Positions 13,353 to 22,102 are shown, counted from the first letter of the whole stretch. The stretch is 63,412 nt of DNA, filler included, from Octopus bimaculoides (GCF_001194135.2; 3 parts of 3 records of this genome joined end to end with filler, not necessarily neighbours in it), one strand, 5' to 3'. Numbers and translations: made by a program. The notes: generated by a model from the letters alone, not told the origin.

Positions 13353-13673
13353 TTTTATATAAAGATGATAGCCTAATTAAAACTTATACCTTAAATTTAA
13401 CTACGAATAAAGTGAAATGGTTTGCCCTTAAGACAAATATATTATGGTGCTTAATACTAAATGTATTTATTAATCCACTGGAATATTATGAATATCCTCA
13501 TTAATTATACTGATCTTAAAGTTAAAAATCATTCAGTTTTAATAACACAATTTCCCCTCAAATACAATTACGCCAAAAAATGTTGCCACATTATAAAGTT
13601 TGGTAAATATCACAAGGAAAATAATAATAATAATAATAACAACAAGATCAAATTTCAATATTTCTAAAAATAT

Positions 13674-16600
13674 TTATTTGTCATAATGAAAGAAAGCAAA
13701 AGATTGACGTCCAGGGATAATTCCAAAAACCATGAAAGAATTTTCTGAAGCATCAAAACCAAGAACTTCAAAGACTTCATTGTCATCAGTCCTGAGGAGT
13801 AAATATTTTGCATTGTTTTTTAAAGACAGGATTTCAATATCTTCAGATGTTTCCCCTTCAATATGTTCAGGCATTTGGAAAATATTGTTTAGTCTATCTG
13901 TTATATAAACACATTCACCAATTGTGCTGAGACGAGGTCTTTGAATATAATATCCCCTCTCATATTTTTCTCCTATTCTTATCCTCCTGACCAACGATTT
14001 TTCCCTGAGCCATTCCACAATACAGAAATCATCCGCTCTCATATCTATTTCTACCTCCCTCCTCATAACAACCACATCACCAGAAGATGTGACTCTTACA
14101 TCAAGTATCCTCGCATCTCCGTCAATCCTTCTCCACCTCCCCTTCTTCCCCCTACACACTTCATCTTTACATTTCCCATCTTTCATATCAACAACATCCA
14201 CATAATAAGAGTCGTTGGCTTCGGACTCTTTGCAAAGGTAGTAAAGCTGCTCTGTCTCTTTCTCTTCAGGTAGGTTTCTAATATGATGACCACCACACAC
14301 GAGTTGATTGTCGTTGTATTTATAAATCGTGTTGTAGTATTTCTCAGTTTTGATGGTTTTTAAACAGCGGAGATCCCTGTTGAAGACCATCATTTCTTTA
14401 CCAAAGACGACTATGAAATGTTCATCACTCCACCGACATATATCCAGTGGTTGTTGCTGTTGTGGTTGTTGTTTAGAAAAAAAGGCTTTTAAGTATTCAA
14501 ATATCCACCAAAATATGTTCAGTGCTGGTGGTTGTTGTTGTGGTAGTTGTTTGTGTTGAAGTATGTCACCTGTTGTTGTGCTGATTAAGGTGACACTTTC
14601 TCGAAACATCAACACACTCACATTGTCATCTAATTTAATTAATTTATTGTTCCAGTCCTTGCTGTCCCACAAATCATAATTAACAGGTTCCTCGAATGCA
14701 GGAATGGAAAAAGGGACCATTGCTGTTCTATATGGAAGTCTCCTCACTGATATTTCATCAATTCCTGACTTACCCTCCGCTATGTAATTACCGCATCTCA
14801 CCTTTAATCTACCTTTACCAATTATTTCACCTGATATACTTCTTCCTCCATCTCCTTCACTATATTTCGATTTATTAATTAATTCATTAGTGAATATTTC
14901 CTTGTTCATCTGAGATGTAATGGAAGGGAAACGATGACCAGAATCAAGATCTAATAACGACACAGATTCCAGAACCTTCACTTGGTCCCCATCAATCTTT
15001 ATGCAATGACATTCAATCAATTCAATATGGACACACCAGTAAATATTCCCCACTTTTCTGCATATTACACCATAAGGCACTTGACTTTGCCAAACTTGAT
15101 AATTCTTCAAATCTTTTCCATTCAGTTGAAATATTTCTTTTCTTTTAGGAACCGTGGCCATTATGTGTTTTCCTTGTGTAAAACACACACCACCAACTAA
15201 ACTTGCCACATTTCTGTGACATAGCAGCTCCCCGTCTTCATCGAATATTTTAACAGTTCCATTATTGGCTTTTTCACACACAACTGTCTTTCCTTCTTCA
15301 GAAATATCAAAATCTTTTACTTGAACAGCAAATTCGTCTGTTTGTAAACGAGCAACCGGGATCCTTTCTCGATTCACCATAAACAACCCTTCAACATACA
15401 ATTCATTCCTTCCCCTCCTGGGGCTTCCAACAAACCTTGGTCCTCTACTGTCTATACTGGAGAAACGTATTTTATCTTTATAAATTCTTCTATTTAAAAA
15501 TATTCTCTTATACTCCCCAGTCTGGGTCAAACACAAAATATTATGATATTCAGTTAAATTAACATATTTATCCCACACACCATTAATGTAGAAATAACTG
15601 TCAGCAGTTGTCATTCTGTCATCAATGATACCATCAACCTTCATGTAGTGTCTGACTGAATGTAAATATTGACCATCACTGTTGAAGAAAATGATGAATC
15701 TTAAGTTGTAGACAATGATGACATCATCAGCAATAACGTTAATTTCACAGATGTCATTAACATAAATTCGAAGATCTTCATTTCTAAATAATAATGTTTT
15801 AGGTATGTCCATTTGTTTTATTTCCTTCACATTCGAATGTGTTTCATCGATATCAACAAAATACAAATGACATCCATCTCTCCGTCCCAATTTACTACAA
15901 ACCAGTTGATTGTTTGATAAAGAAGCCACACATTGATATTCATTTCTTGTCTGGCAAATTACCAACGACAATGGAAATTCCACTTTTAATGTCAACATTT
16001 GGTAGTCATTATCTGAATCATTCCAATTTGTAATGACCAGTGTGTTTGACTGCCATCGACACATTTTAATATATTTATAAAGATTCAATTTGATAGAATC
16101 CAAAAAATGACCATCCAATGTGAATATCTTAATGTTTCTATTCCCCTCGTCCCATCCTGCAATCAGATTATTTTCAGTTATAACCAAACGATTAATCTCC
16201 ACTGGTCCCTTGTCTCCCAAATGTTGAGAGAGAGGAATATGTCTGCCTTTATCAGAAACTGTCAGATCCTGTAGATATAAAGAAGAAGACAACATTTCAC
16301 TGACAGAAATGTTTCTGGAAAATACATCTACCAGGTCGATATAATAATTAAGTTGATTATTTGTAACGAGATCATTAACCAACAAATTATGATCGTTTAT
16401 AGCAAACATATGGCTGCTGTCTATAAGATAAACAAACGTTTGGTCCATAGATCCACCATAGAGATTGGGGAGATGTTTCACTTGGGACATTAAAACACTG
16501 GGTGTCATCTCAAAACTACAAAGATGACGACAAGCACTACCACGACCACCACCACCTATTCTAGTGTTGTACTGTAAAGCTTTTCCCCTCGTAACAATTA

Positions 16601-16997
16601 ATAGCTTTTCTGTTTCCTTTTCTATTGATAATGATTTCACAAAAAAGGGGATATTAATTCTATGGATTATTTCAACTTCATTATAACATTTAATGGCTAA
16701 AATATCTAAATGGGATGGTTTATCACAATAACAAACAATTTCACCTTCACCCATCTTACACACCCGTACATAAGGCTGCCCTAATGATACACTTCTCACT
16801 GTCTTTGATAGGTTTCCGATGACCCTTAATTGTTTCTGTAGGGGTAATGTGACACCTATTTGATTAAAATCCCATCGACATATATCCGTAGCTGTAGACG
16901 GCAGAGATAATCTCGACACAATGTCTCCTTCATTAGAAATGTATAACAAGCAATCATGGTTGATGTCGGAGACCACCAACTGTCCATTTGCCAGATT
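13674..16997 (-). CDS. giant multi-beta-propeller (NHL/TRIM-C-terminal-like) protein, C-terminal part
   Basis: 1,107 uninterrupted codons from the gap to TAA at 13676-13674; recurring propeller blade motifs (LVVSD..N.CL, DICRW, VKIFDEDG). AATAAA on the minus strand at 13471-13466. Confidence 0.88.
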   Translation of the reverse strand, partial: NLANGQLVVSDINHDCLLYISNEGDIVSRLSLPSTATDICRWDFNQIGVTLPLQKQLRVIGNLSKTVRSVSLGQPYVRVCKMGEGEIVCYCDKPSHLDILAIKCYNEVEIIHRINIPFFVKSLSIEKETEKLLIVTRGKALQYNTRIGGGGRGSACRHLCSFEMTPSVLMSQVKHLPNLYGGSMDQTFVYLIDSSHMFAINDHNLLVNDLVTNNQLNYYIDLVDVFSRNISVSEMLSSSLYLQDLTVSDKGRHIPLSQHLGDKGPVEINRLVITENNLIAGWDEGNRNIKIFTLDGHFLDSIKLNLYKYIKMCRWQSNTLVITNWNDSDNDYQMLTLKVEFPLSLVICQTRNEYQCVASLSNNQLVCSKLGRRDGCHLYFVDIDETHSNVKEIKQMDIPKTLLFRNEDLRIYVNDICEINVIADDVIIVYNLRFIIFFNSDGQYLHSVRHYMKVDGIIDDRMTTADSYFYINGVWDKYVNLTEYHNILCLTQTGEYKRIFLNRRIYKDKIRFSSIDSRGPRFVGSPRRGRNELYVEGLFMVNRERIPVARLQTDEFAVQVKDFDISEEGKTVVCEKANNGTVKIFDEDGELLCHRNVASLVGGVCFTQGKHIMATVPKRKEIFQLNGKDLKNYQVWQSQVPYGVICRKVGNIYWCVHIELIECHCIKIDGDQVKVLESVSLLDLDSGHRFPSITSQMNKEIFTNELINKSKYSEGDGGRSISGEIIGKGRLKVRCGNYIAEGKSGIDEISVRRLPYRTAMVPFSIPAFEEPVNYDLWDSKDWNNKLIKLDDNVSVLMFRESVTLISTTTGDILQHKQLPQQQPPALNIFWWIFEYLKAFFSKQQPQQQQPLDICRWSDEHFIVVFGKEMMVFNRDLRCLKTIKTEKYYNTIYKYNDNQLVCGGHHIRNLPEEKETEQLYYLCKESEANDSYYVDVVDMKDGKCKDEVCRGKKGRWRRIDGDARILDVRVTSSGDVVVMRREVEIDMRADDFCIVEWLREKSLVRRIRIGEKYERGYYIQRPRLSTIGECVYITDRLNNIFQMPEHIEGETSEDIEILSLKNNAKYLLLRTDDNEVFEVLGFDASENSFMVFGIIPGRQSFAFFHYDK

Positions 16998-17627
16998 NNN
17001 NNNNNNNNNNNNNNNNNNNNNNNNNNNNNNNNNNNNNNNNNNNNNNNNNNNNNNNNNNNNNNNNNNNNNNNNNNNNNNNNNNNNNNNNNNNNNNNNNNNN
17101 NNNNNNNNNNNNNNNNNNNNNNNNNNNNNNNNNNNNNNNNNNNNNNNNNNNNNNNNNNNNNNNNNNNNNNNNNNNNNNNNNNNNNNNNNNNNNNNNNNNN
17201 NNNNNNNNNNNNNNNNNNNNNNNNNNNNNNNNNNNNNNNNNNNNNNNNNNNNNNNNNNNNNNNNNNNNNNNNNNNNNNNNNNNNNNNNNNNNNNNNNNNN
17301 NNNNNNNNNNNNNNNNNNNNNNNNNNNNNNNNNNNNNNNNNNNNNNNNNNNNNNNNNNNNNNNNNNNNNNNNNNNNNNNNNNNNNNNNNNNNNNNNNNNN
17401 NNNNNNNNNNNNNNNNNNNNNNNNNNNNNNNNNNNNNNNNNNNNNNNNNNNNNNNNNNNNNNNNNNNNNNNNNNNNNNNNNNNNNNNNNNNNNNNNNNNN
17501 NNNNNNNNNNNNNNNNNNNNNNNNNNNNNNNNNNNNNNNNNNNNNNNNNNNNNNNNNNNNNNNNNNNNNNNNNNNNNNNNNNNNNNNNNNNNNNNNNNNN
17601 NNNNNNNNNNNNNNNNNNNNNNNNNNA

Positions 17628-19062
17628 AAGAAGGAAGCTCAAGGAAAACTAAATTATTTTGGTTAATTATTTCCTCATTATCAGTGAATAATTTAGCTTT
17701 CTTGTTTCTGTAAATTATTAATATAGAAGATGTTGACATAGGTAGAATATTTGTAATGTTGTTGCAATCCTCAATATCAATATAGTCTTTTAAACTGGGG
17801 GTATGTAGCTGGTGGTTGTATGACAGTTTGGGCCAAAAGTCTTCATTTTTTTGAATGGCATGAGGTTTGCCAAAATAATCTGTTACCAAAATGGTATCTT
17901 TACCAACAGAAATAGAGCGGCATTTCCTGCCAATGTCCCTCATTGTCACACCACCTTTAGCCGAAATCCTATAAATGATCTGTCCCTGGAGGACAAAGAA
18001 ATAGCTTTGGTATAGTGAGATTTTGCTAGGGAAGTCCAGAGAATGGGTCTCTACCTCCCATAACTGTTGGCCATCCATATCATAACAGATTACTCTGTTA
18101 ATACTGGAAAATGATATTAAAAGTATATTTTGGACCCCTACAGCAATATCTGTAGGGGTTTCTTTGGTAATGAATTCGTGCTTAATTCTATTCTCCTCCC
18201 AATCCATTCGGTAAACAGTCTTACCAAACATTTCTACACCTATAAGTGTAGAATGTTCCAAGTAAGAAGCCAAATAGAATCCCAGCTGTATTGTTTTAAT
18301 CTTGAAAGTAGTGGGGCTGATAATGAGAATCATTTCTTGGAAGGGGAGGGTTGCCAGAACCATGTCTTGACCGATTCTGGTGAAACTGGTGACAGAAGAT
18401 GGACAATGGACATCATTTCTGTCACCATCTCTTGTCACACAGCATATTGTCATACAATGGTGGGAATATGTTACTATTCCCTCCTGTATGCCAATGATAT
18501 TGGATATTAATATGTTTTTGTCAAATTCTTCACCAGATTCCTCGATCTTTGCTTCTCTGGTCACAACTGGGCAAAGAGGACGAAATTTTGTGATCACTTT
18601 TGGTGGCTCAATGGTTTTGTGGTTGTATGGGTTACAGGTGACGTAAATGTCAAAGAGTCTTTGTTGGAACCAATCAAGATTTTGGTGAATAAAATCATTA
18701 TTTTGTTTTGTAAATTCCAGAAAACTTTGCATTTTACGTTTGATTTTACGTAAAATACATGGTCCATCTAAATCCATGTGATTACATTCATCTTTTACAT
18801 AATCTATAAACGTATTGATGTGGTCTGTTTTGATTATTGTTTGGTAACATGTCACAATATGAAGAAAGCCTGGTAAAATGGACATTTCCCATTCTTCAGG
18901 TTTCCTTGTGTTTTGCGTTTCCTGTTCTTCTGTTTTCTCTGTGTTTCGTGTATGTAATATTTGGGGAAAAATTCGTGTAGTTTCCTTATAAACCAATCTT
19001 GTATCACAGCCTGTGGCAGGAATGAGAGCCAACATTTTGCTTTCTTCGTTAATCTTCTCCAT
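17628..19062 (-). CDS. giant multi-beta-propeller protein, N-terminal part
   Basis: 478 open codons from aaaATGg to the gap; helical N-terminus then an NHL-like unit (PTDIAVG..NILLIS....NRVICYDMDGQQLWEV....LDFPSKI). Continuity across the 630-N gap is inferred. Confidence 0.82.
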
Positions 19063-19183
19063 TTTATGAATATGAAATTATTATCTTGTTCTGTTAAATA
19101 TATTCTTTTCTCTTGATTTTGTCTTCTTCCTTTCGAATACAATTTATCTCTTCAAAATTCACAAACTTTTTACAGCAAAGCTG
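19063..19183 (-). other. splice acceptor and 5'UTR part of the coding exon of the propeller gene
   Basis: ttttcattttatttcAG at 19183-19181; no ATG between 19180 and 19063. Confidence 0.6.
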
Positions 19184-20424
19184 AAATAAAATGAAAACTT
19201 TATTAGTTTTGTGAAAAATTTTTGATAAAATAATATTTACTTGATTCATTCAAACAGTTTCAAGGAAAACACACATTTCATTAAATATATTAAAAAAAAT
19301 TGATTATTTGACAGTGAAGTTAAACATTTAAACTATTTTCTTTGGAATAACCATCAGAAATAAAACTTGAAGATATAACTACACCATTATCTGAATATAA
19401 GTGATGGCGAAAAGTTTTGTAGTAAAACGAAATATAAGTCTTTTGTTGAGGTTATTTCTACAGATATGCGATGGAAGTTATAGCCAGGACTGATTTCTTG
19501 CTACAATGTTTCATATCGAAAATTCAGATGGAAACGAACAATGAGATCAAAGACAAAAACATCGGTTGTTTGTTCTCTCTGATGTCTCAATATGAAAGGT
19601 TTTCTATATAAAATGTGTTAAGACAGAGCTCAATAAATATGGAATGAATTCCTGTTGGGAGCAATAACATAATGGAATATAATGATGTCTAAAAGTAAAG
19701 GACACGAGAAAATAAAATCATGAGAAACATTTTTAGGTGAAAACAAACCTTATCCTCCCATAGTAAATCCTTCCCCCACCGTTACACCTCCTTCCTGCAC
19801 CATACTATTCCACATTGGTCTTCCCCGCCCCATAACACAACCTTCACCCACCGCTGTCATATTAGAGAGAGAGAGAGAGAGAGTACATGCATATACACAC
19901 AAATATTTGAATATAATGTGCATATGACTAATGCGTGTGTGTCGTCGTCTTGCCTTATCTCTGGCGATTGATAACAAAGCGTACAGTTTGTTTGTCTGTA
20001 GTTCGTTAGGCGAGAGAAAATATTAGCTTGGAAATAAAGCATTTAACCAGAGAAAAGCTGCCTCAGTGAAGTATTCGTTGACCCATGGGGAAACAGAAAA
20101 GGGAGCATTGAAAACAGATGATGCTGGTAGTCATGCGCATGCGTATATTTAATACCCTTTTTGGGGCTCTGAACAACCAATGGAGTTGAACGAGGATCCA
20201 TGTGACGACATACAGTGTGTTTAGGGCATTTTAAATCAGAAAGATCCCTTCTCTCTACATGCGTAACCCCTGCCCAAGAGAGAAAGAAAGAAGTAGAACA
20301 CTAATGACAGAGAAATCTTTCGTCTCCTGTGAAAACAATTGAAACGTTAGACATATTTGACACAAATGAGAGGAAAAAATAAAGTACAAATGTGAATGCG
20401 ACAGTGTGTGTGTGTAGTCTTTTA

Positions 20425-20740
20425 TTTGTTTCAGTCATTTGACTGCGGCCATGCTGGAGCATCGCTTTTAGTCGAACTAATCGACCCCGGGACTTATTCG
20501 TTGTAAGCCGAGTACTTATTCTATCGGTCTCTTTTGCCGAACCGCTAGATTACGGGGACGTAAGCACATTAGCATCAGTCGTCAGCGACGGTGGGGTGAC
20601 AAACACAGACACACAAATATATATACACGGCGGGCTTCTTTCAGTTTCCGTCTACCAAATCCACTTACAAGCCTTTGGTTACGCAGTGAACCCGGAACAG
20701 AGTGGTTGGTAAGCAAGCTACTTACTACACACCCACTCCT
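20425..20740 (-). mobile_element. tRNA-derived SINE (family 1), near full length
   Basis: tttgactgcggccatgctggagc...gggcttctttcagtttccgtctaccaaatccac...ttactacacacccact. Confidence 0.8.
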
Positions 20741-20778
20741 GTGCCTATGTATGTATAATTATGTATAATTATATATAT

Positions 20779-20991
20779 ATATTAATAGTTATCGCCAAGC
20801 CAACATGGCAGTCCAGGAAAATAGGACGAATGCTGCTGTTGATTAGCTCCAAGAGGCCATCGCCTCTAGCTAGCTGGTTCACGTGTCACATAGCTAGCTA
20901 GAGGCGATGGCCTCTTGGAACTAATAATCAACAGTAGCATTCGTCCTATTTTCTTGGACTGCCATGTTGGCTTGGCGATAACTATTAATAT
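20779..20991. repeat. about 213-bp palindrome / foldback MITE
   Basis: Arms 20779-20875 and 20892-20991 are reverse complements with few substitutions and one 3-nt indel; 16-nt loop. Confidence 0.85.
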
Positions 20992-21403
20992 CCAGTACCG
21001 CTGCCCTAGTCTTCTTCTGAGAGATTTAGAAATATTAATATTTCGATATATATATAGTTCCCATCATTCAAACATGGTGTAAATGTGTTAGTACTCCCAA
21101 TACAATTAAAATATCTGGTATATTTTCTAACCTAGCAGTTCGACAAATAGGTTCAGTTAAAATATCTACCAGACTAAAAGAGTAATACTTCAGTTATGTT
21201 ATATGGTATTTATTCAAGCTCTATGTTCTGGGATCAAATCCTGGCGAGGTTTAACAGCTTCTAGTCTATAAGATACTGCCTGAAAATAAAATAATTTTCT
21301 ATAAAACAGTATATTTATGTTTGAAATAAGTCTAATGTATATTTAACGAAGTAAATGAATTACTAAATTGTTAATTAAAATAATTATCAAGAAAAAGACT
21401 TAC

Positions 21404-21513
21404 CAAAGTCAATAATTGTGTTTGAATGTCAGCCTGAGGTGTTGGTCTCTGAGTTGAGTTCGTTCAAAGAGCAGCAAAAATGTAAAAATCTTTAGTCATG
21501 AGGCCTATTTATA
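21404..21513 (-). promoter_or_regulatory. TATA box, initiator and non-coding exon 1 of the propeller gene
   Basis: Minus-strand TATAAATAG at 21513-21505, CA initiator-like at about 21481, ATG-free exon of about 78 nt, donor TTG/GTAAGT at 21403. Confidence 0.55.
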
Positions 21514-21657
21514 AGCAGCAAGAAAAACAGTGGGCGTTAACGAGTTGTGCGTGCGTGTGTACGTGTGTACGTGTGTGTACGTATGTGTAGTGTGATATTT
21601 GAACAGAATCTGTTATGGTAAGTCCTTGACACCAATTATAGCAGTGAATGTCAGGCA

Positions 21658-21696
<39 letters not shown>

Positions 21697-21959
21697 ATAT
21701 ATGTATATGTATGTGTTTGTAGGTTTGCTAGGTTCCCACTATAAGGCAAAAAGAGAAAAATAATTGGAACACACACACATAGGGACACATATATAAACAA
21801 CCCTACATATATTTATCTGTGTGTATATATATATATATATATAAACAATATATGAGTATATGCATATATATGTACATGTATGTTTATACGTTCATCTACA
21901 TGTACATATAGATACATAACTGGGTACATGACGTGGCAAAAGAACAAGGACAAAATGGT

Positions 21960-22050
21960 AAACAAGGTGCAACAAACAAGCAGGCCACATAGAAACATCC
22001 CCTTCATCAGCTGCCACCATTAAAACTCCGGCGTTTCGAAGAATTAATAT
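21960..22050 (-). mobile_element. Penelope-like terminal remnant
   Basis: Plus strand ccccttcatcagctg...ggcgtttcgaag, i.e. on the minus strand CTTCGAAACGCC and GCTGATGAAGGG, the two motifs typical of Penelope ends; similar remnants near 9040, 51230 and 58420. Confidence 0.35.
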
Positions 22051-22064
22051 ATATATGTACACAA

Positions 22065-22102
<38 letters not shown>

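What the first reader, a model, noticed from the sequence alone, without database searches (positions are those of the whole stretch)
13674..19062. About 1,800-aa protein of roughly six tandem NHL-like beta-propellers with no RING/B-box, TM segment or signal peptide
Seen: 478 + 1,107 open codons around a 630-N gap. A unit of about 250-290 aa repeats, marked by recurring motifs: TDICRWDFNQIGVT (about 16870), KMCRWQSNTLVIT (about 16055), LDICRWSDEHFIVV (about 14435), and [IL]KI[FY]..DG starts at about 16140 and 15245. Approximate units: 18540-17830, 17790-gap, 16997-16270, 16200-15400, 15330-14950 (partial), 14640-13680. A short helical N-terminal region precedes them. Known: molluscs have large expansions of TRIM-like genes with one divergent NHL-type propeller, and NHL propellers bind RNA, glycans or peptides. 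Inference: a cytosolic multi-propeller sensor or scaffold, with strongly diverged units hinting at a fast-evolving immune or recognition family. I do not recognise this architecture; it is the best candidate for an undescribed system here.
Basis: partly seen in the sequence, partly recalled or inferred. Interest (0 to 1): 0.75.

Follow-up and report, generated by a model that had tools for sequence, protein, structure and literature searches.

The report
Octopus six-propeller NHL-like orphan protein
This is one intronless octopus gene for a protein of about 1,800 residues built from six NHL-type beta-propellers in a row; it belongs to an unnamed, octopod-only gene family whose local branch is multiplying and changing fast, so it is an unusual new architecture of a familiar fold, with its function still unknown.

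Summary
On the minus strand, 478 open codons (19062-17629, starting at an ATG just after in-frame stops) and 1,107 open codons (16997-13677) flank the 629-N gap. Thirteen homologues run across the junction. Ten have exactly 227 residues there. The closest Octopus vulgaris locus has 685 nt of open frame, the length class that keeps the window in frame. So this is one gene of about 1,810 codons.

Profile-profile comparison finds six in-register units of about 215-320 aa. With a 39-row alignment, AlphaFold2 folds unit 4 at pLDDT 81.8. Foldseek's best PDB matches are the six-bladed NHL domains of TRIM2, Brat, Mei-P26, TRIM3 and Lin41. The unit profile also hits those domains by sequence (E down to 6e-11). 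Unit 5 is short, and only its first blade is clearly NHL-like.

I found no RING, B-box, TM segment or signal peptide.

In 1.84 billion representatives the family has only 27 hits. All are from Octopus or Argonauta, and nearly all are annotated 'uncharacterized'. Some paralogues are conserved (92-94% between species). The window's clade is tandemly amplified, with dN/dS about 0.75 (loops above 1), yet its ORFs stay open.

The function, probably a multivalent binding scaffold or sensor, is inferred, not shown.

The parts
19181..19190 (-). Possible 3' splice acceptor (tttatttcag) about 120 nt upstream of the ATG, suggesting a 5'-UTR intron. Inferred only.
   Evidence: Sequence read. The 5' flank is conserved at 83% with O. 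vulgaris L002 out to window 19577.
18538..19062 (-). N-terminal non-propeller region, aa 1-175. It has a variable hydrophilic lead and then a conserved segment of about 90 aa, probably helical (…NLDWFQQRLFDIYV…KFRP). There is no Cys/His zinc motif.
   Evidence: ATG with upstream in-frame stops. Family alignment A2. No Pfam hit. No significant PDB hit; only weak matches to helical proteins. No signal peptide.
17746..18537 (-). Propeller unit 1 (aa 176-439).
   Evidence: In-register profile similarity to unit 2 (82%, 178 columns) and to unit 4 (75%, 162 columns). Boundaries.
17629..17745 (-). Start of propeller unit 2 (aa 440-478). The rest is lost in the gap.
   Evidence: Family alignment.
16998..17626 (.). 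Assembly gap (629 N). It should hold about 685 nt, or about 227-229 codons: most of unit 2 and the first strand of unit 3.
   Evidence: Ten of the 13 homologues that span the junction have exactly 227 residues here. O. vulgaris L002 has 685 nt of open frame here.
16182..16997 (-). Propeller unit 3 (C-part aa 1-272). It contains TDICRW and a Gly/Arg-rich loop.
   Evidence: hhalign gives u3-u6 96%, u3-u4 84% and u2-u3 84%.
15300..16181 (-). Propeller unit 4 (C-part aa 273-566), an NHL-type six-bladed beta-propeller. The stretch actually modelled was 15243-16214.
   Evidence: AF2 gave pLDDT 81.8 and pTM 0.79, with four-stranded blades. Foldseek top hits were TRIM2, Brat, Mei-P26, TRIM3 and Lin41 NHL domains, at E 1e-8 and target-normalised TM 0.64-0.70.
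14643..15299 (-). Unit 5 (C-part aa 567-785). It is short, about 215 aa. The first blade is canonical NHL-like (VKDFDISEEGKTVVCEKANNGTVKIFDEDG). The fold of the rest is unresolved.
   Evidence: hhalign gives u4-u5 83% over only 78 columns. The unit-5 profile hits NHL domains only through positions about 10-40.
13677..14642 (-). Propeller unit 6 (C-part aa 786-1107). It carries a Gln-rich insertion just before LDICRW.
   Evidence: hhalign gives u4-u6 97% (173 columns) and u3-u6 96%.
13673..13678 (-). AATAAA polyadenylation-signal hexamer overlapping the TAA stop codon (13676-13674).
   Evidence: Sequence read. Its function is inferred.

Best explanation
Window 19062-13674 (minus strand) is one intronless protein-coding gene of about 1,810 codons, broken only by an assembly gap. 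Its product has no signal peptide, TM segment or catalytic domain, and no RING or B-box. It consists of about 175 N-terminal residues (a variable lead plus a conserved, probably helical segment) followed by six tandem units of about 215-320 aa. These units are diverged copies of one NHL-type six-bladed beta-propeller. This is shown directly for unit 4 and by in-register homology for units 1, 2, 3 and 6. Unit 5 is a shortened, partly recognisable copy.

The gene belongs to a family found only in octopods. Some paralogues sit alone on large chromosomes and are conserved. The window's clade is tandemly amplified, with at least 22 distinct gene models on one 29-Mb O. vulgaris chromosome. It evolves quickly, yet its long ORFs are kept open.

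Inferred mechanism: a cytosolic or nuclear 'beads-on-a-string' binding platform. Each propeller would offer one ligand-binding face, as in TRIM-NHL proteins (RNA or peptide) or in the four propellers of LRP6, so the protein could bind several or repeated ligands at once. The fast-changing loops suggest that the ligands also change, for example viral, transposon-derived or other conflict-related molecules.

What is shown: the gene structure, the repeat architecture, the fold class, the taxonomic range and the evolutionary pattern. What is inferred: the subcellular location, the binding function and the arms-race interpretation.
For: One gene:
- Homologues of 1,478-1,925 aa cover both halves in the same order.
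- The gap-equivalent stretch in O. vulgaris L002 is 685 nt of open frame, which restores the window's frame.
- The gene is single-exon in relatives: P0004 spans 5,139 nt for 1,712 codons plus stop, and P0034 spans 2,940 nt for 979 codons plus stop.

Repeats:
- Profile windows against the whole family profile give in-register hits at spacings of about 260-280 aa.
- The unit-versus-unit hhalign matrix confirms this.

Fold:
- AF2 with alignment A1 gave pLDDT 81.8.
- Foldseek against the PDB ranks NHL domains first, at E about 1e-8 and target-normalised TM up to 0.70, against 0.47-0.50 for WD40s.
- The unit profile against PDB sequences hits TRIM2 (6e-11), TRIM3 (1.3e-8), Brat (1.4e-8), Thin (1.9e-6), TRIM71 (2e-6) and Mei-P26 (1e-3).
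- Pfam NHL matches 7 of 39 unit sequences below threshold.

Absent features:
- No Pfam or NCBIfam domain.
- Maximum 19-residue Kyte-Doolittle hydropathy is 1.35 and 1.63, and the N-terminus is hydrophilic.

Taxonomic range:
- An exhaustive phmmer search of 1.84e9 representatives gave 27 hits. All that were looked up are Octopus vulgaris, O. sinensis, O. bimaculoides or Argonauta hians.

Evolution:
- dN/dS is 0.78, 0.75 and 0.56 against the three nearest copies.
- For unit 4, loops give 1.3-1.7 and strands 0.7-1.0 against the two nearest copies.
- No stops were seen in about 1,060 aligned codons. About 20 would be expected from random substitution at the observed divergence, and none of 500 simulations gave zero.
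- Conserved paralogues are 91.6% and 93.9% identical between O. vulgaris and O. bimaculoides.
- A tail-to-tail gene pair plus three copies of the 3'-end fragment lie within 15 kb in L002.
Against: - The gap itself is unread, so a stop, a frameshift or an intron inside it cannot be excluded. As written, the frames differ.
- The nearest O. vulgaris copy carries a 1-nt frameshift. Many family gene models on that chromosome are fragments. Some copies, possibly including this one, may therefore be dying.
- Only unit 4 was modelled with confidence. The single-sequence model of the whole C-part failed, at pLDDT 30. In the unit-4 model the sixth blade and C-terminal margin score only pLDDT 52-69.
- Pfam's NHL model is not significant on the window protein.
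- The top E-values in the PDB profile search belong to designed or idealised WD40 proteins. These come from summing many individually insignificant blade matches.
- Net charge of the units is about neutral, which gives no hint of RNA binding.
- I have no expression evidence.
- The dN/dS values are pairwise Nei-Gojobori estimates between probable paralogues with mosaic dS (0.11-0.48). Gene conversion may distort them.
Confidence: 0.62

Rival explanations
1. The window copy is a recently dead or dying member of the amplified clade. The gap hides a disabling lesion, and the high dN/dS reflects relaxed constraint rather than adaptation.
For: - The frames on the two sides of the gap differ as written.
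- The nearest O. vulgaris gene has a 1-nt frameshift that its gene model hides with an intron.
- L001's copy lacks the first 145 codons and changes frame near its 3' end.
- Many sibling models are fragments of 138-980 aa.
- dN/dS is about 0.75.
Against: - 478 + 1,107 codons are open in 35% GC DNA.
- No stops were seen against about 20 expected under random substitution, and none of 500 simulations gave zero.
- The start codon, the stop codon, an AATAAA at the stop and a conserved 5' flank are all intact.
- The gap length is only an estimate, and 685 nt, as in L002, restores the frame.
- Frameshifts in the O. vulgaris long-read assembly may be homopolymer errors.
Confidence: 0.2
2. The two ORFs are separate genes, or a misjoin by the scaffolder, and not one protein.
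For: The gap is unread, and the frames differ with 629 N.
Against: - Thirteen homologues from four species carry both halves in one chain, in the same order. They have 190-229 residues between the halves, and ten of them have exactly 227.
- Two O. vulgaris loci are colinear with the window on both sides of the gap. The spacings are 685 and 687 nt, close to the 629 estimate.
- The N-part ends mid-unit, and the C-part starts without the first strand of its blade.
Confidence: 0.03
3. The ORF belongs to a mobile element or an endogenised virus, being multi-copy, intronless and lineage-restricted, and is not a host gene.
For: - It is intronless and has many copies on one chromosome, with partial 3' fragments scattered nearby.
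- Interspersed repeats are shared between the window's flanks and the O. vulgaris loci.
Against: - There is no reverse transcriptase, integrase, transposase or capsid domain in the ORF.
- No LTRs or TIRs flank it; only microsatellites do.
- The Foldseek viral library gives only generic propellers.
- Three paralogue lineages are single, conserved, full-length genes at 92-95% identity between species or copies. This is how host genes behave.
Confidence: 0.05
4. The units are propellers of another superfamily, such as WD40, YWTD or PQQ, and the NHL resemblance is only generic blade similarity.
For: - The best E-values of the unit profile against PDB sequences are idealised WD40 proteins (2ymu at 8.8e-16). 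A PQQ-repeat protein scores 6.8e-7.
- Pfam NHL is below threshold.
Against: - The WD40 scores are sums of 8-10 blade matches, each with i-Evalue above 15. NHL domains give individually passing stretches that span several blades, for example Brat 111-208 against profile positions 128-219.
- Foldseek ranks six-bladed NHL domains first, with TM 0.64-0.70 and rmsd 4.3-4.8 over 277-299 columns. WD40 targets reach only 0.47-0.50.
- YWTD (LRP6) scores only E 0.65.
- The unit length of about 270 aa fits six blades, not seven.
Confidence: 0.1

Closest known systems
NHL-repeat beta-propeller domains of TRIM-NHL proteins (TRIM2, TRIM3, TRIM71/Lin41, Brat, Mei-P26, Thin/TRIM32, NHL-2)
   Same: Fold and blade sequence pattern are shared: a six-bladed propeller of about 270-290 aa. 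These domains are the best Foldseek matches (E 1e-8, TM up to 0.70) and give significant profile-to-sequence matches. The blade motif 'V.D..N..I.IF..DG.L' matches the NHL consensus as I recall it.
   Different: TRIM-NHL proteins have RING, B-box and coiled-coil modules (some also a filamin domain) and a single C-terminal propeller. This protein has none of those modules and six propellers. Sequence identity is only 10-15%. Pfam NHL does not reach threshold. The conserved C-R-W motif in the second blade is not, as far as I know, an NHL feature.
Multi-propeller ligand platforms such as LRP5/6 (four YWTD propellers)
   Same: Several six-bladed propellers are strung in one chain. In LRP6 each propeller binds its own ligands (my own knowledge). 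This is the best analogy for how the protein may work.
   Different: LRP proteins are secreted or membrane proteins with a signal peptide, EGF modules between the propellers and a TM segment. None of these is present here. YWTD sequence similarity is not significant (E 0.65).
Cytosolic multi-propeller scaffolds (DDB1/CPSF160/SF3B3 triple WD40-like propellers; EML tandem atypical propellers)
   Same: These are large cytosolic or nuclear proteins made almost entirely of propellers. They act as assembly platforms without catalytic domains (my own knowledge).
   Different: They are seven-bladed WD40-like propellers, often interdigitated, and are ancient and universally conserved. Here the propellers are NHL-type, arranged as sequential duplicates, and confined to octopods. 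Foldseek TM to DDB1 is 0.42.
Uncharacterized octopod proteins LOC106873529, LOC106880634 and LOC106882419 (O. bimaculoides), LOC115216371 and LOC118768537 (O. sinensis), CAI9743080 (O. vulgaris) and GAB1597371 (Argonauta hians)
   Same: These are true family members. They are colinear over the full length at 33-72% identity to the C-part (up to 77% for partial gene models), with the same six-unit plan.
   Different: None has a name, a domain annotation or a publication. The window copy itself was not found as a predicted protein in the databases searched.

Membership tests
NHL-repeat six-bladed beta-propeller (Pfam PF01436 repeat; TolB-like six-bladed fold) | Six-bladed beta-propeller of four-stranded blades, about 260-300 aa | tested here: met
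   The unit-4 AF2 model has pLDDT 81.8, with five clean four-stranded blades and a less confident sixth. It aligns over 277-299 columns to 273-282-residue NHL domains at target-normalised TM 0.64-0.70. The other units are covered only by homology to unit 4.
NHL-repeat six-bladed beta-propeller (Pfam PF01436 repeat; TolB-like six-bladed fold) | Statistically significant sequence similarity to bona fide NHL domains | tested here: met
   The unit profile A1 against PDB sequences gives TRIM2 6e-11, TRIM3 1.3e-8, Brat 1.4e-8, Thin 1.9e-6, TRIM71 2e-6 and Mei-P26 1e-3. The unit-5 profile gives TRIM2 3e-8.
NHL-repeat six-bladed beta-propeller (Pfam PF01436 repeat; TolB-like six-bladed fold) | Match to the Pfam NHL model at its gathering threshold | tested here: not met
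   There is no NHL hit at E<=1 on either window ORF. Only sub-threshold hits appear, in 7 of 39 unit sequences, with best E 1.7e-4.
TRIM-NHL proteins | N-terminal RING, B-box and coiled-coil (tripartite motif) | tested here: not met
   There are no zinc-finger domains by Pfam. The N-terminal 175 aa have no conserved Cys/His pattern and no PDB relative. A helical segment is possible, but it was not shown to be a coiled coil.
TRIM-NHL proteins | A single C-terminal NHL propeller | tested here: not met
   There are six tandem units.
LDL-receptor-type multi-propeller proteins (LRP5/6) | Signal peptide, YWTD propellers separated by EGF modules, and a TM anchor | tested here: not met
   There are no EGF or Ldl_recept_b Pfam hits, no signal peptide or TM segment, and LRP6 scores only E 0.65.
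Octopod six-propeller family (unnamed; e.g. XP_014776406.1) | Colinear full-length homology: N-terminal segment followed by six units in the same order | tested here: met
   phmmer E-values range from 0 to 1e-103 against full-length members. The alignment is colinear across both ORFs and the gap.
Octopod six-propeller family (unnamed; e.g. XP_014776406.1) | Single-exon coding region | tested here: met
   The window ORFs are uninterrupted on each side of the gap. P0004 and P0034 have gene spans equal to 3x their length plus a stop.

The most novel reading that the evidence does not exclude
The family is an octopod invention of innate recognition. It would be a RING-less, six-propeller descendant of NHL proteins in which each propeller face is a separately evolving binding site. 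The tandemly amplified, fast-evolving clade would then act as a germline-encoded repertoire against viruses or transposons, analogous to TRIM5/finTRIM or NLR expansions but built on a different, multivalent scaffold. The conserved single-copy paralogues would do a housekeeping job.
Probability: 0.15. Interest if true: 0.8.

Novelty: new variant of a known kind. Interest (0 to 1): 0.55.

Why it matters
Cephalopod genomes are known for lineage-specific gene expansions, but most of their 'uncharacterized' genes have no structural assignment. Here a whole octopod-only family gets one. It is a chain of six NHL-type propellers with no other recognisable domain, an architecture I did not find in any described protein. 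The family splits into conserved members and a clustered, rapidly diversifying branch. That split makes it a concrete candidate for a lineage-specific recognition system in animals that lack adaptive immunity. It is also a clean case of how whole-propeller duplication can build a giant protein. The practical value is modest until expression and ligands are known.

Tried and rejected
- The first two homologous-protein runs timed out. Later ones worked but had low recall. The profile queries A1 and A4 returned only 13 and 2 proteins and missed known family members, so their silence outside octopods carries little weight. The octopod-only claim rests mainly on the exhaustive phmmer search.
- Single-sequence AF2 of the 1,107-aa C-part failed at pLDDT 30.
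- Plain BLASTP self-comparison showed almost no internal repeat. Profiles were needed.
- My first hhalign unit matrix was contaminated for adjacent units, because the fragments shared 30-aa margins. I redid it with non-overlapping units.
- Pfam, NCBIfam and PDB sequence searches with the single window ORFs gave nothing.
- The N-terminal 175 aa could not be classified.
- Net charge per unit gave no hint of RNA binding.
- No LTR or TIR signature of a mobile element was found, and the viral structure library gave no specific match.
- Literature searches for octopus/cephalopod plus NHL, and for six LOC identifiers, found nothing relevant.
- The Logan contig carrying P0060 (L004) has no poly(A) tail, so it could not serve as evidence of expression.
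- I could not identify the window's species. Its protein is absent from the databases, and its best matches are 72-93% identical Octopus proteins.

Full report
**1. What is in the sequence**

The piece is AT-rich (about 35% GC) animal DNA with microsatellites and five N-gaps.

On the minus strand an ORF starts at the ATG at 19062. Two in-frame TAA codons lie 6-7 codons upstream. The ORF runs 478 codons to 17629, where the 629-N gap (16998-17626) begins. A second open frame of 1,107 codons runs from 16997 to 13677 and ends in TAA at 13676-13674. An AATAAA hexamer overlaps that stop. A polypyrimidine-AG, a possible acceptor for a 5'-UTR intron, lies at 19190-19181. No other copy of the gene is in the window.

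**2. Is it one gene across the gap?**

As written, the frames do not match, because 2 leftover bases plus 629 is not a multiple of 3. The gap length is only an estimate.

An exhaustive phmmer search of 1.84 billion representative proteins with the C-part found 27 relatives. Several are full-length proteins of 1,478-1,925 aa that contain both halves.

In a MAFFT alignment of 14 of these, 13 span the junction. They have 190 to 229 residues between the last N-part residue and the first C-part residue, and 10 of them have exactly 227.

Two O. vulgaris loci are colinear with the window on both sides of the gap:
- L001 (OX597841.1, about 9.08 Mb) at 87-88% nucleotide identity, with a flank-to-flank distance of 687 nt.
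- L002 (same chromosome, about 21.98 Mb) at 83-86% identity. The similarity includes 515 nt upstream of the ATG.

In L002 the gap-equivalent stretch is 685 nt. It lies inside a 1,353-codon open frame, and 685+2 = 687 = 229 codons, so the same length would put the window's two ORFs in frame.

I conclude that this is one gene of about 1,810 codons. About 228 of them are unread: most of unit 2 and the first strand of unit 3.

The gene is intronless in relatives too. P0004 spans 5,139 nt for 1,712 codons plus stop, and P0034 spans 2,940 nt for 979 codons plus stop.

**3. The repeat**

Single-sequence comparisons barely see the repeat. BLASTP gave one weak pair. Smith-Waterman against shuffles gave z = 5.2-7.5 for three of fifteen unit pairs.

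Profiles see it clearly. Windows of 120 columns from the family alignment, compared with the whole alignment by hhalign, hit other places in register at spacings of about 260-280 aa. This defines six units that start at about 170, 432, 697, 978, 1255 and 1469 of P0004.

With non-overlapping unit profiles the probabilities are:

| Pair | Probability | Columns |
|---|---|---|
| u4-u6 | 97% | 173 |
| u3-u6 | 96% | 87 |
| u2-u4 | 94% | 184 |
| u2-u6 | 86% | 99 |
| u2-u3 | 84% | 194 |
| u3-u4 | 84% | 115 |
| u4-u5 | 83% | 78 only |
| u1-u2 | 82% | 178 |
| u1-u4 | 75% | 162 |

An earlier matrix was inflated for neighbouring units by shared margins, and I discard it.

Unit 5 is about 215 aa and resembles the others only over its first 80-100 residues.

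All six units can be aligned together. They share a first blade (ng.iviyd..n..ik.f..dG.l), a second blade with tdiCRW, and further blade-like segments.

**4. The fold**

Single-sequence AF2 of the C-part failed at pLDDT 30, though the model was mostly strands.

I then aligned window unit 4 (with margins; window 15243-16214, 324 aa) with 38 other sequences. These were unit-4 orthologues plus the other five units of the window and of six diverse paralogues (A1).

AF2 with this alignment gave mean pLDDT 81.8 and pTM 0.79. There are 133 residues at pLDDT 90 or above, and the strands group into four-stranded blades. Five blades are clean. The sixth blade and the C-terminal margin are less confident, at pLDDT 52-69.

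Foldseek against the PDB puts NHL domains first:
- TRIM2 (7qrv, 7b2r: E 1e-8, target-normalised TM 0.67-0.70, rmsd about 4.6 over 284-295 columns).
- Brat (1q7f), Mei-P26 (7nyq), NHL-2 (8suc), TRIM3 (7qrw), Lin41/TRIM71 and Thin.
- Seven-bladed WD40 proteins reach only TM 0.47-0.50.

An HMM of A1 against all PDB sequences gives an independent line of evidence. It hits TRIM2 (6e-11), TRIM3 (1.3e-8), Brat (1.4e-8, profile 128-219 against Brat 111-208), Thin (1.9e-6), TRIM71 (2e-6) and Mei-P26 (1e-3). The even lower E-values for idealised WD40 proteins are sums of 8-10 blade matches, none of which is significant on its own.

Pfam's NHL model does not reach threshold on the window ORFs. It gives sub-threshold hits on 7 of 39 unit sequences, with best E 1.7e-4.

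The unit-5 profile hits the same NHL domains, but only through its first blade.

So the units are very diverged NHL-type six-bladed propellers. This is direct for unit 4, by homology for units 1-3 and 6, and partial for unit 5.

**5. What is not there**

- No RING, B-box, filamin, EGF or any other Pfam or NCBIfam domain.
- No TM-grade hydrophobic window. The Kyte-Doolittle 19-residue maximum is 1.35 in the N-part and 1.63 in the C-part, and the latter falls in a strand region.
- The N-terminus is hydrophilic, so there is no signal peptide.
- The first 175 residues comprise a variable lead, which is basic in some paralogues, and then a conserved segment of about 90 aa ending in KFRP. This region has no significant PDB relative; the weak best matches are helical proteins.
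- Unit net charges are near neutral.

**6. The family**

Every hit whose source I looked up comes from Octopus vulgaris, O. sinensis, O. bimaculoides or Argonauta hians. Nearly all are named 'uncharacterized' or 'hypothetical'. The exceptions are two automatic names, 'Sema domain-containing' and 'zinc finger protein 431-like', given to fragments. One further orthologue of P0013, at 85% identity, comes from an SRA assembly of unknown species.

Literature searches found no description of the family.

The family has two kinds of member:
- Conserved members. P0007 against P0029 is 91.6% identical and P0013 against P0032 is 93.9% identical, both between O. vulgaris and O. bimaculoides. These lie on chromosomes of 97-216 Mb. 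The two Argonauta copies are 94.8% identical to each other.
- The window's clade. At least 22 distinct gene models lie on one 29.19-Mb O. vulgaris chromosome, many of them fragments. Within 15 kb, L002 holds two full-length copies tail to tail and three copies of the last about 83 codons.

**7. Evolutionary pattern**

All values are Nei-Gojobori pairwise estimates for the window against its nearest relatives.

| Comparison | dN/dS | dS |
|---|---|---|
| C-part vs L002 gene 1 | 0.78 | 0.175 |
| C-part vs L001 | 0.75 | 0.168 |
| C-part vs L002 gene 2 | 0.56 | 0.333 |
| N-part vs L002 gene 1 | 0.33 | 0.484 |

By unit, against L002 gene 1, dN/dS is 0.48 for unit 3, 1.49 for unit 4, 0.73 for unit 5 and 0.59 for unit 6.

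For unit 4 I used the model's secondary structure to split the codons. Loops give 1.68 and 1.30 against the two nearest copies. Strands give 1.03 and 0.70. Against the more distant L002 gene 2 there is no such difference (loops 0.50, strands 0.53).

Despite 13% nucleotide divergence there are no stops in about 1,060 aligned codons. Random substitution at that level gives a mean of 19.6 stops, and none of 500 simulations gave zero.

The frame is therefore kept open by selection while the protein sequence, especially the loops, changes fast.

These are pairwise estimates between likely paralogues, and the uneven dS suggests gene conversion. They indicate a pattern but do not prove positive selection.

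The nearest O. vulgaris copy has a 1-nt insertion that shifts the frame where the window is intact. Its gene model hides this with an intron. This could be a real lesion or an assembly error.

**8. How it probably works**

What is shown: a soluble protein with no detectable domain apart from its six propellers.

What is inferred from known NHL and multi-propeller proteins (my own knowledge): NHL propellers bind RNA or peptides on one face, and proteins with several propellers, such as LRP6 and DDB1, use each propeller as a separate docking site. The most likely role is therefore a multivalent binding scaffold or sensor.

The clustered amplification, the birth-and-death pattern and the fast loops fit a recognition role in a conflict, for example with viruses or transposons. 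Reproductive or other fast-evolving functions would fit equally well. I put about 0.85 on the structural description and about 0.3 on the recognition-scaffold mechanism.

**9. Rivals**

- Pseudogene with a lesion hidden in the gap: possible, at about 0.2. The sibling copies are often broken, but the 1,585 open codons argue against long-standing decay.
- Two genes or a misjoin: essentially excluded by colinearity.
- Mobile-element or viral gene: no supporting domains, no terminal repeats and no specific viral structural match. The conserved single-copy paralogues also behave like host genes.
- Another propeller superfamily: both structure and sequence searches rank NHL first. A formal HHsearch against Pfam or ECOD was not available.

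**10. Verdict**

The fold is known. What is new is six NHL-type propellers in tandem, with no tripartite motif, in an octopod-restricted and undescribed family that has a rapidly amplifying branch. I class it as a new variant of a known kind. Interest is moderate (0.55), because function and expression are unknown.

Noticed in passing
L002:10001-15410 (O. vulgaris OX597841.1, about 21.98 Mb): The closest O. vulgaris gene (P0001, CAI9743080) has a 1-nt insertion (TGAGGG against the window's TGA-GG) at about L002 11390, and this shifts the frame. The deposited gene model bridges it with an 'intron', which removes part of units 1-2 (about 176 residues shorter than P0004 there), so the annotated 1,625-aa protein is not the real product. 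It could be a real lesion or a long-read homopolymer error.
   Followed up: partly
L002:15758-16006, 20730-20978, 21163-21411 and 21586-24696: Within 15 kb of the O. vulgaris gene lie a second full-length paralogue in inverted orientation (65% aa identity to the window) and three separate copies of the last about 83 codons plus 3' flank. This is a sign of ongoing local duplication.
   Followed up: partly
window 19062-17629 compared with 16997-13677: Against the same O. vulgaris gene, dS is 0.48 for the N-part but 0.11-0.30 for the C-part units. The divergence is mosaic, which suggests gene conversion or recombination among paralogues.
   Followed up: no
window 14450-14560 (C-part aa about 815-850, unit 6): A Gln-rich insertion (…LPQQQPPALNIFWWIFEYLKAFFSKQQPQQQQP) sits just before the LDICRW motif. 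The Argonauta homologue P0008 has a much longer Q/P/Y-rich tandem-repeat insertion at the same loop, so this looks like an insertion hot spot.
   Followed up: no
Proteins P0027/P0050, P0049, P0021 and P0023 (Octopus): Some database models join family fragments to other domains: C2H2 zinc fingers (P0027, P0050), ankyrin repeats (P0049) and 'zinc finger protein 431-like' (P0021). A 162-aa fragment (P0023) is auto-named 'Sema domain-containing'. These are probably chimeric or mis-annotated models within the amplified cluster.
   Followed up: no
window 5144-5530 (+): A 128-aa ORF starts with a signal-peptide-like hydrophobic stretch (MKNLVLLFTFVVCLWLTKA). It is followed by acidic, Pro/Asp/Glu-rich, loosely repeated sequence (VT.G.PP.DDD). 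It has no Pfam hit and may be an exon of a secreted acidic protein.
   Followed up: partly
window 10508-10900 (+): A 130-aa ORF gives a sub-threshold Pfam match to DUF4581 (E 5.7e-4, 20.5 bits against a cut-off of 27). The match covers almost the whole model (16-131 of 131), so this may be a diverged single-exon homologue.
   Followed up: no
window 20415-20679, 4136-4301, 6045-6209, 7653-7832, 22067-22282: Short stretches are 70-84% identical to several places in the O. vulgaris loci L001 and L002, outside the gene. They look like interspersed (SINE-like) repeats.
   Followed up: no
window 20779-20845 and 20925-20991: An inverted repeat with 67-nt arms, 97% complementary and 79 nt apart, lies about 1.7 kb upstream of the gene. 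It looks like a MITE or a hairpin.
   Followed up: no
L004 (Logan contig SRR11869391_2352341, 7,179 nt): This is a complete 1,687-aa orthologue of the conserved paralogue P0013, at 85% identity, from an unidentified sample. It has 373 nt upstream and 1.7 kb downstream and no poly(A). It shows that this paralogue is conserved in a further octopod-like species, but it does not show expression.
   Followed up: partly
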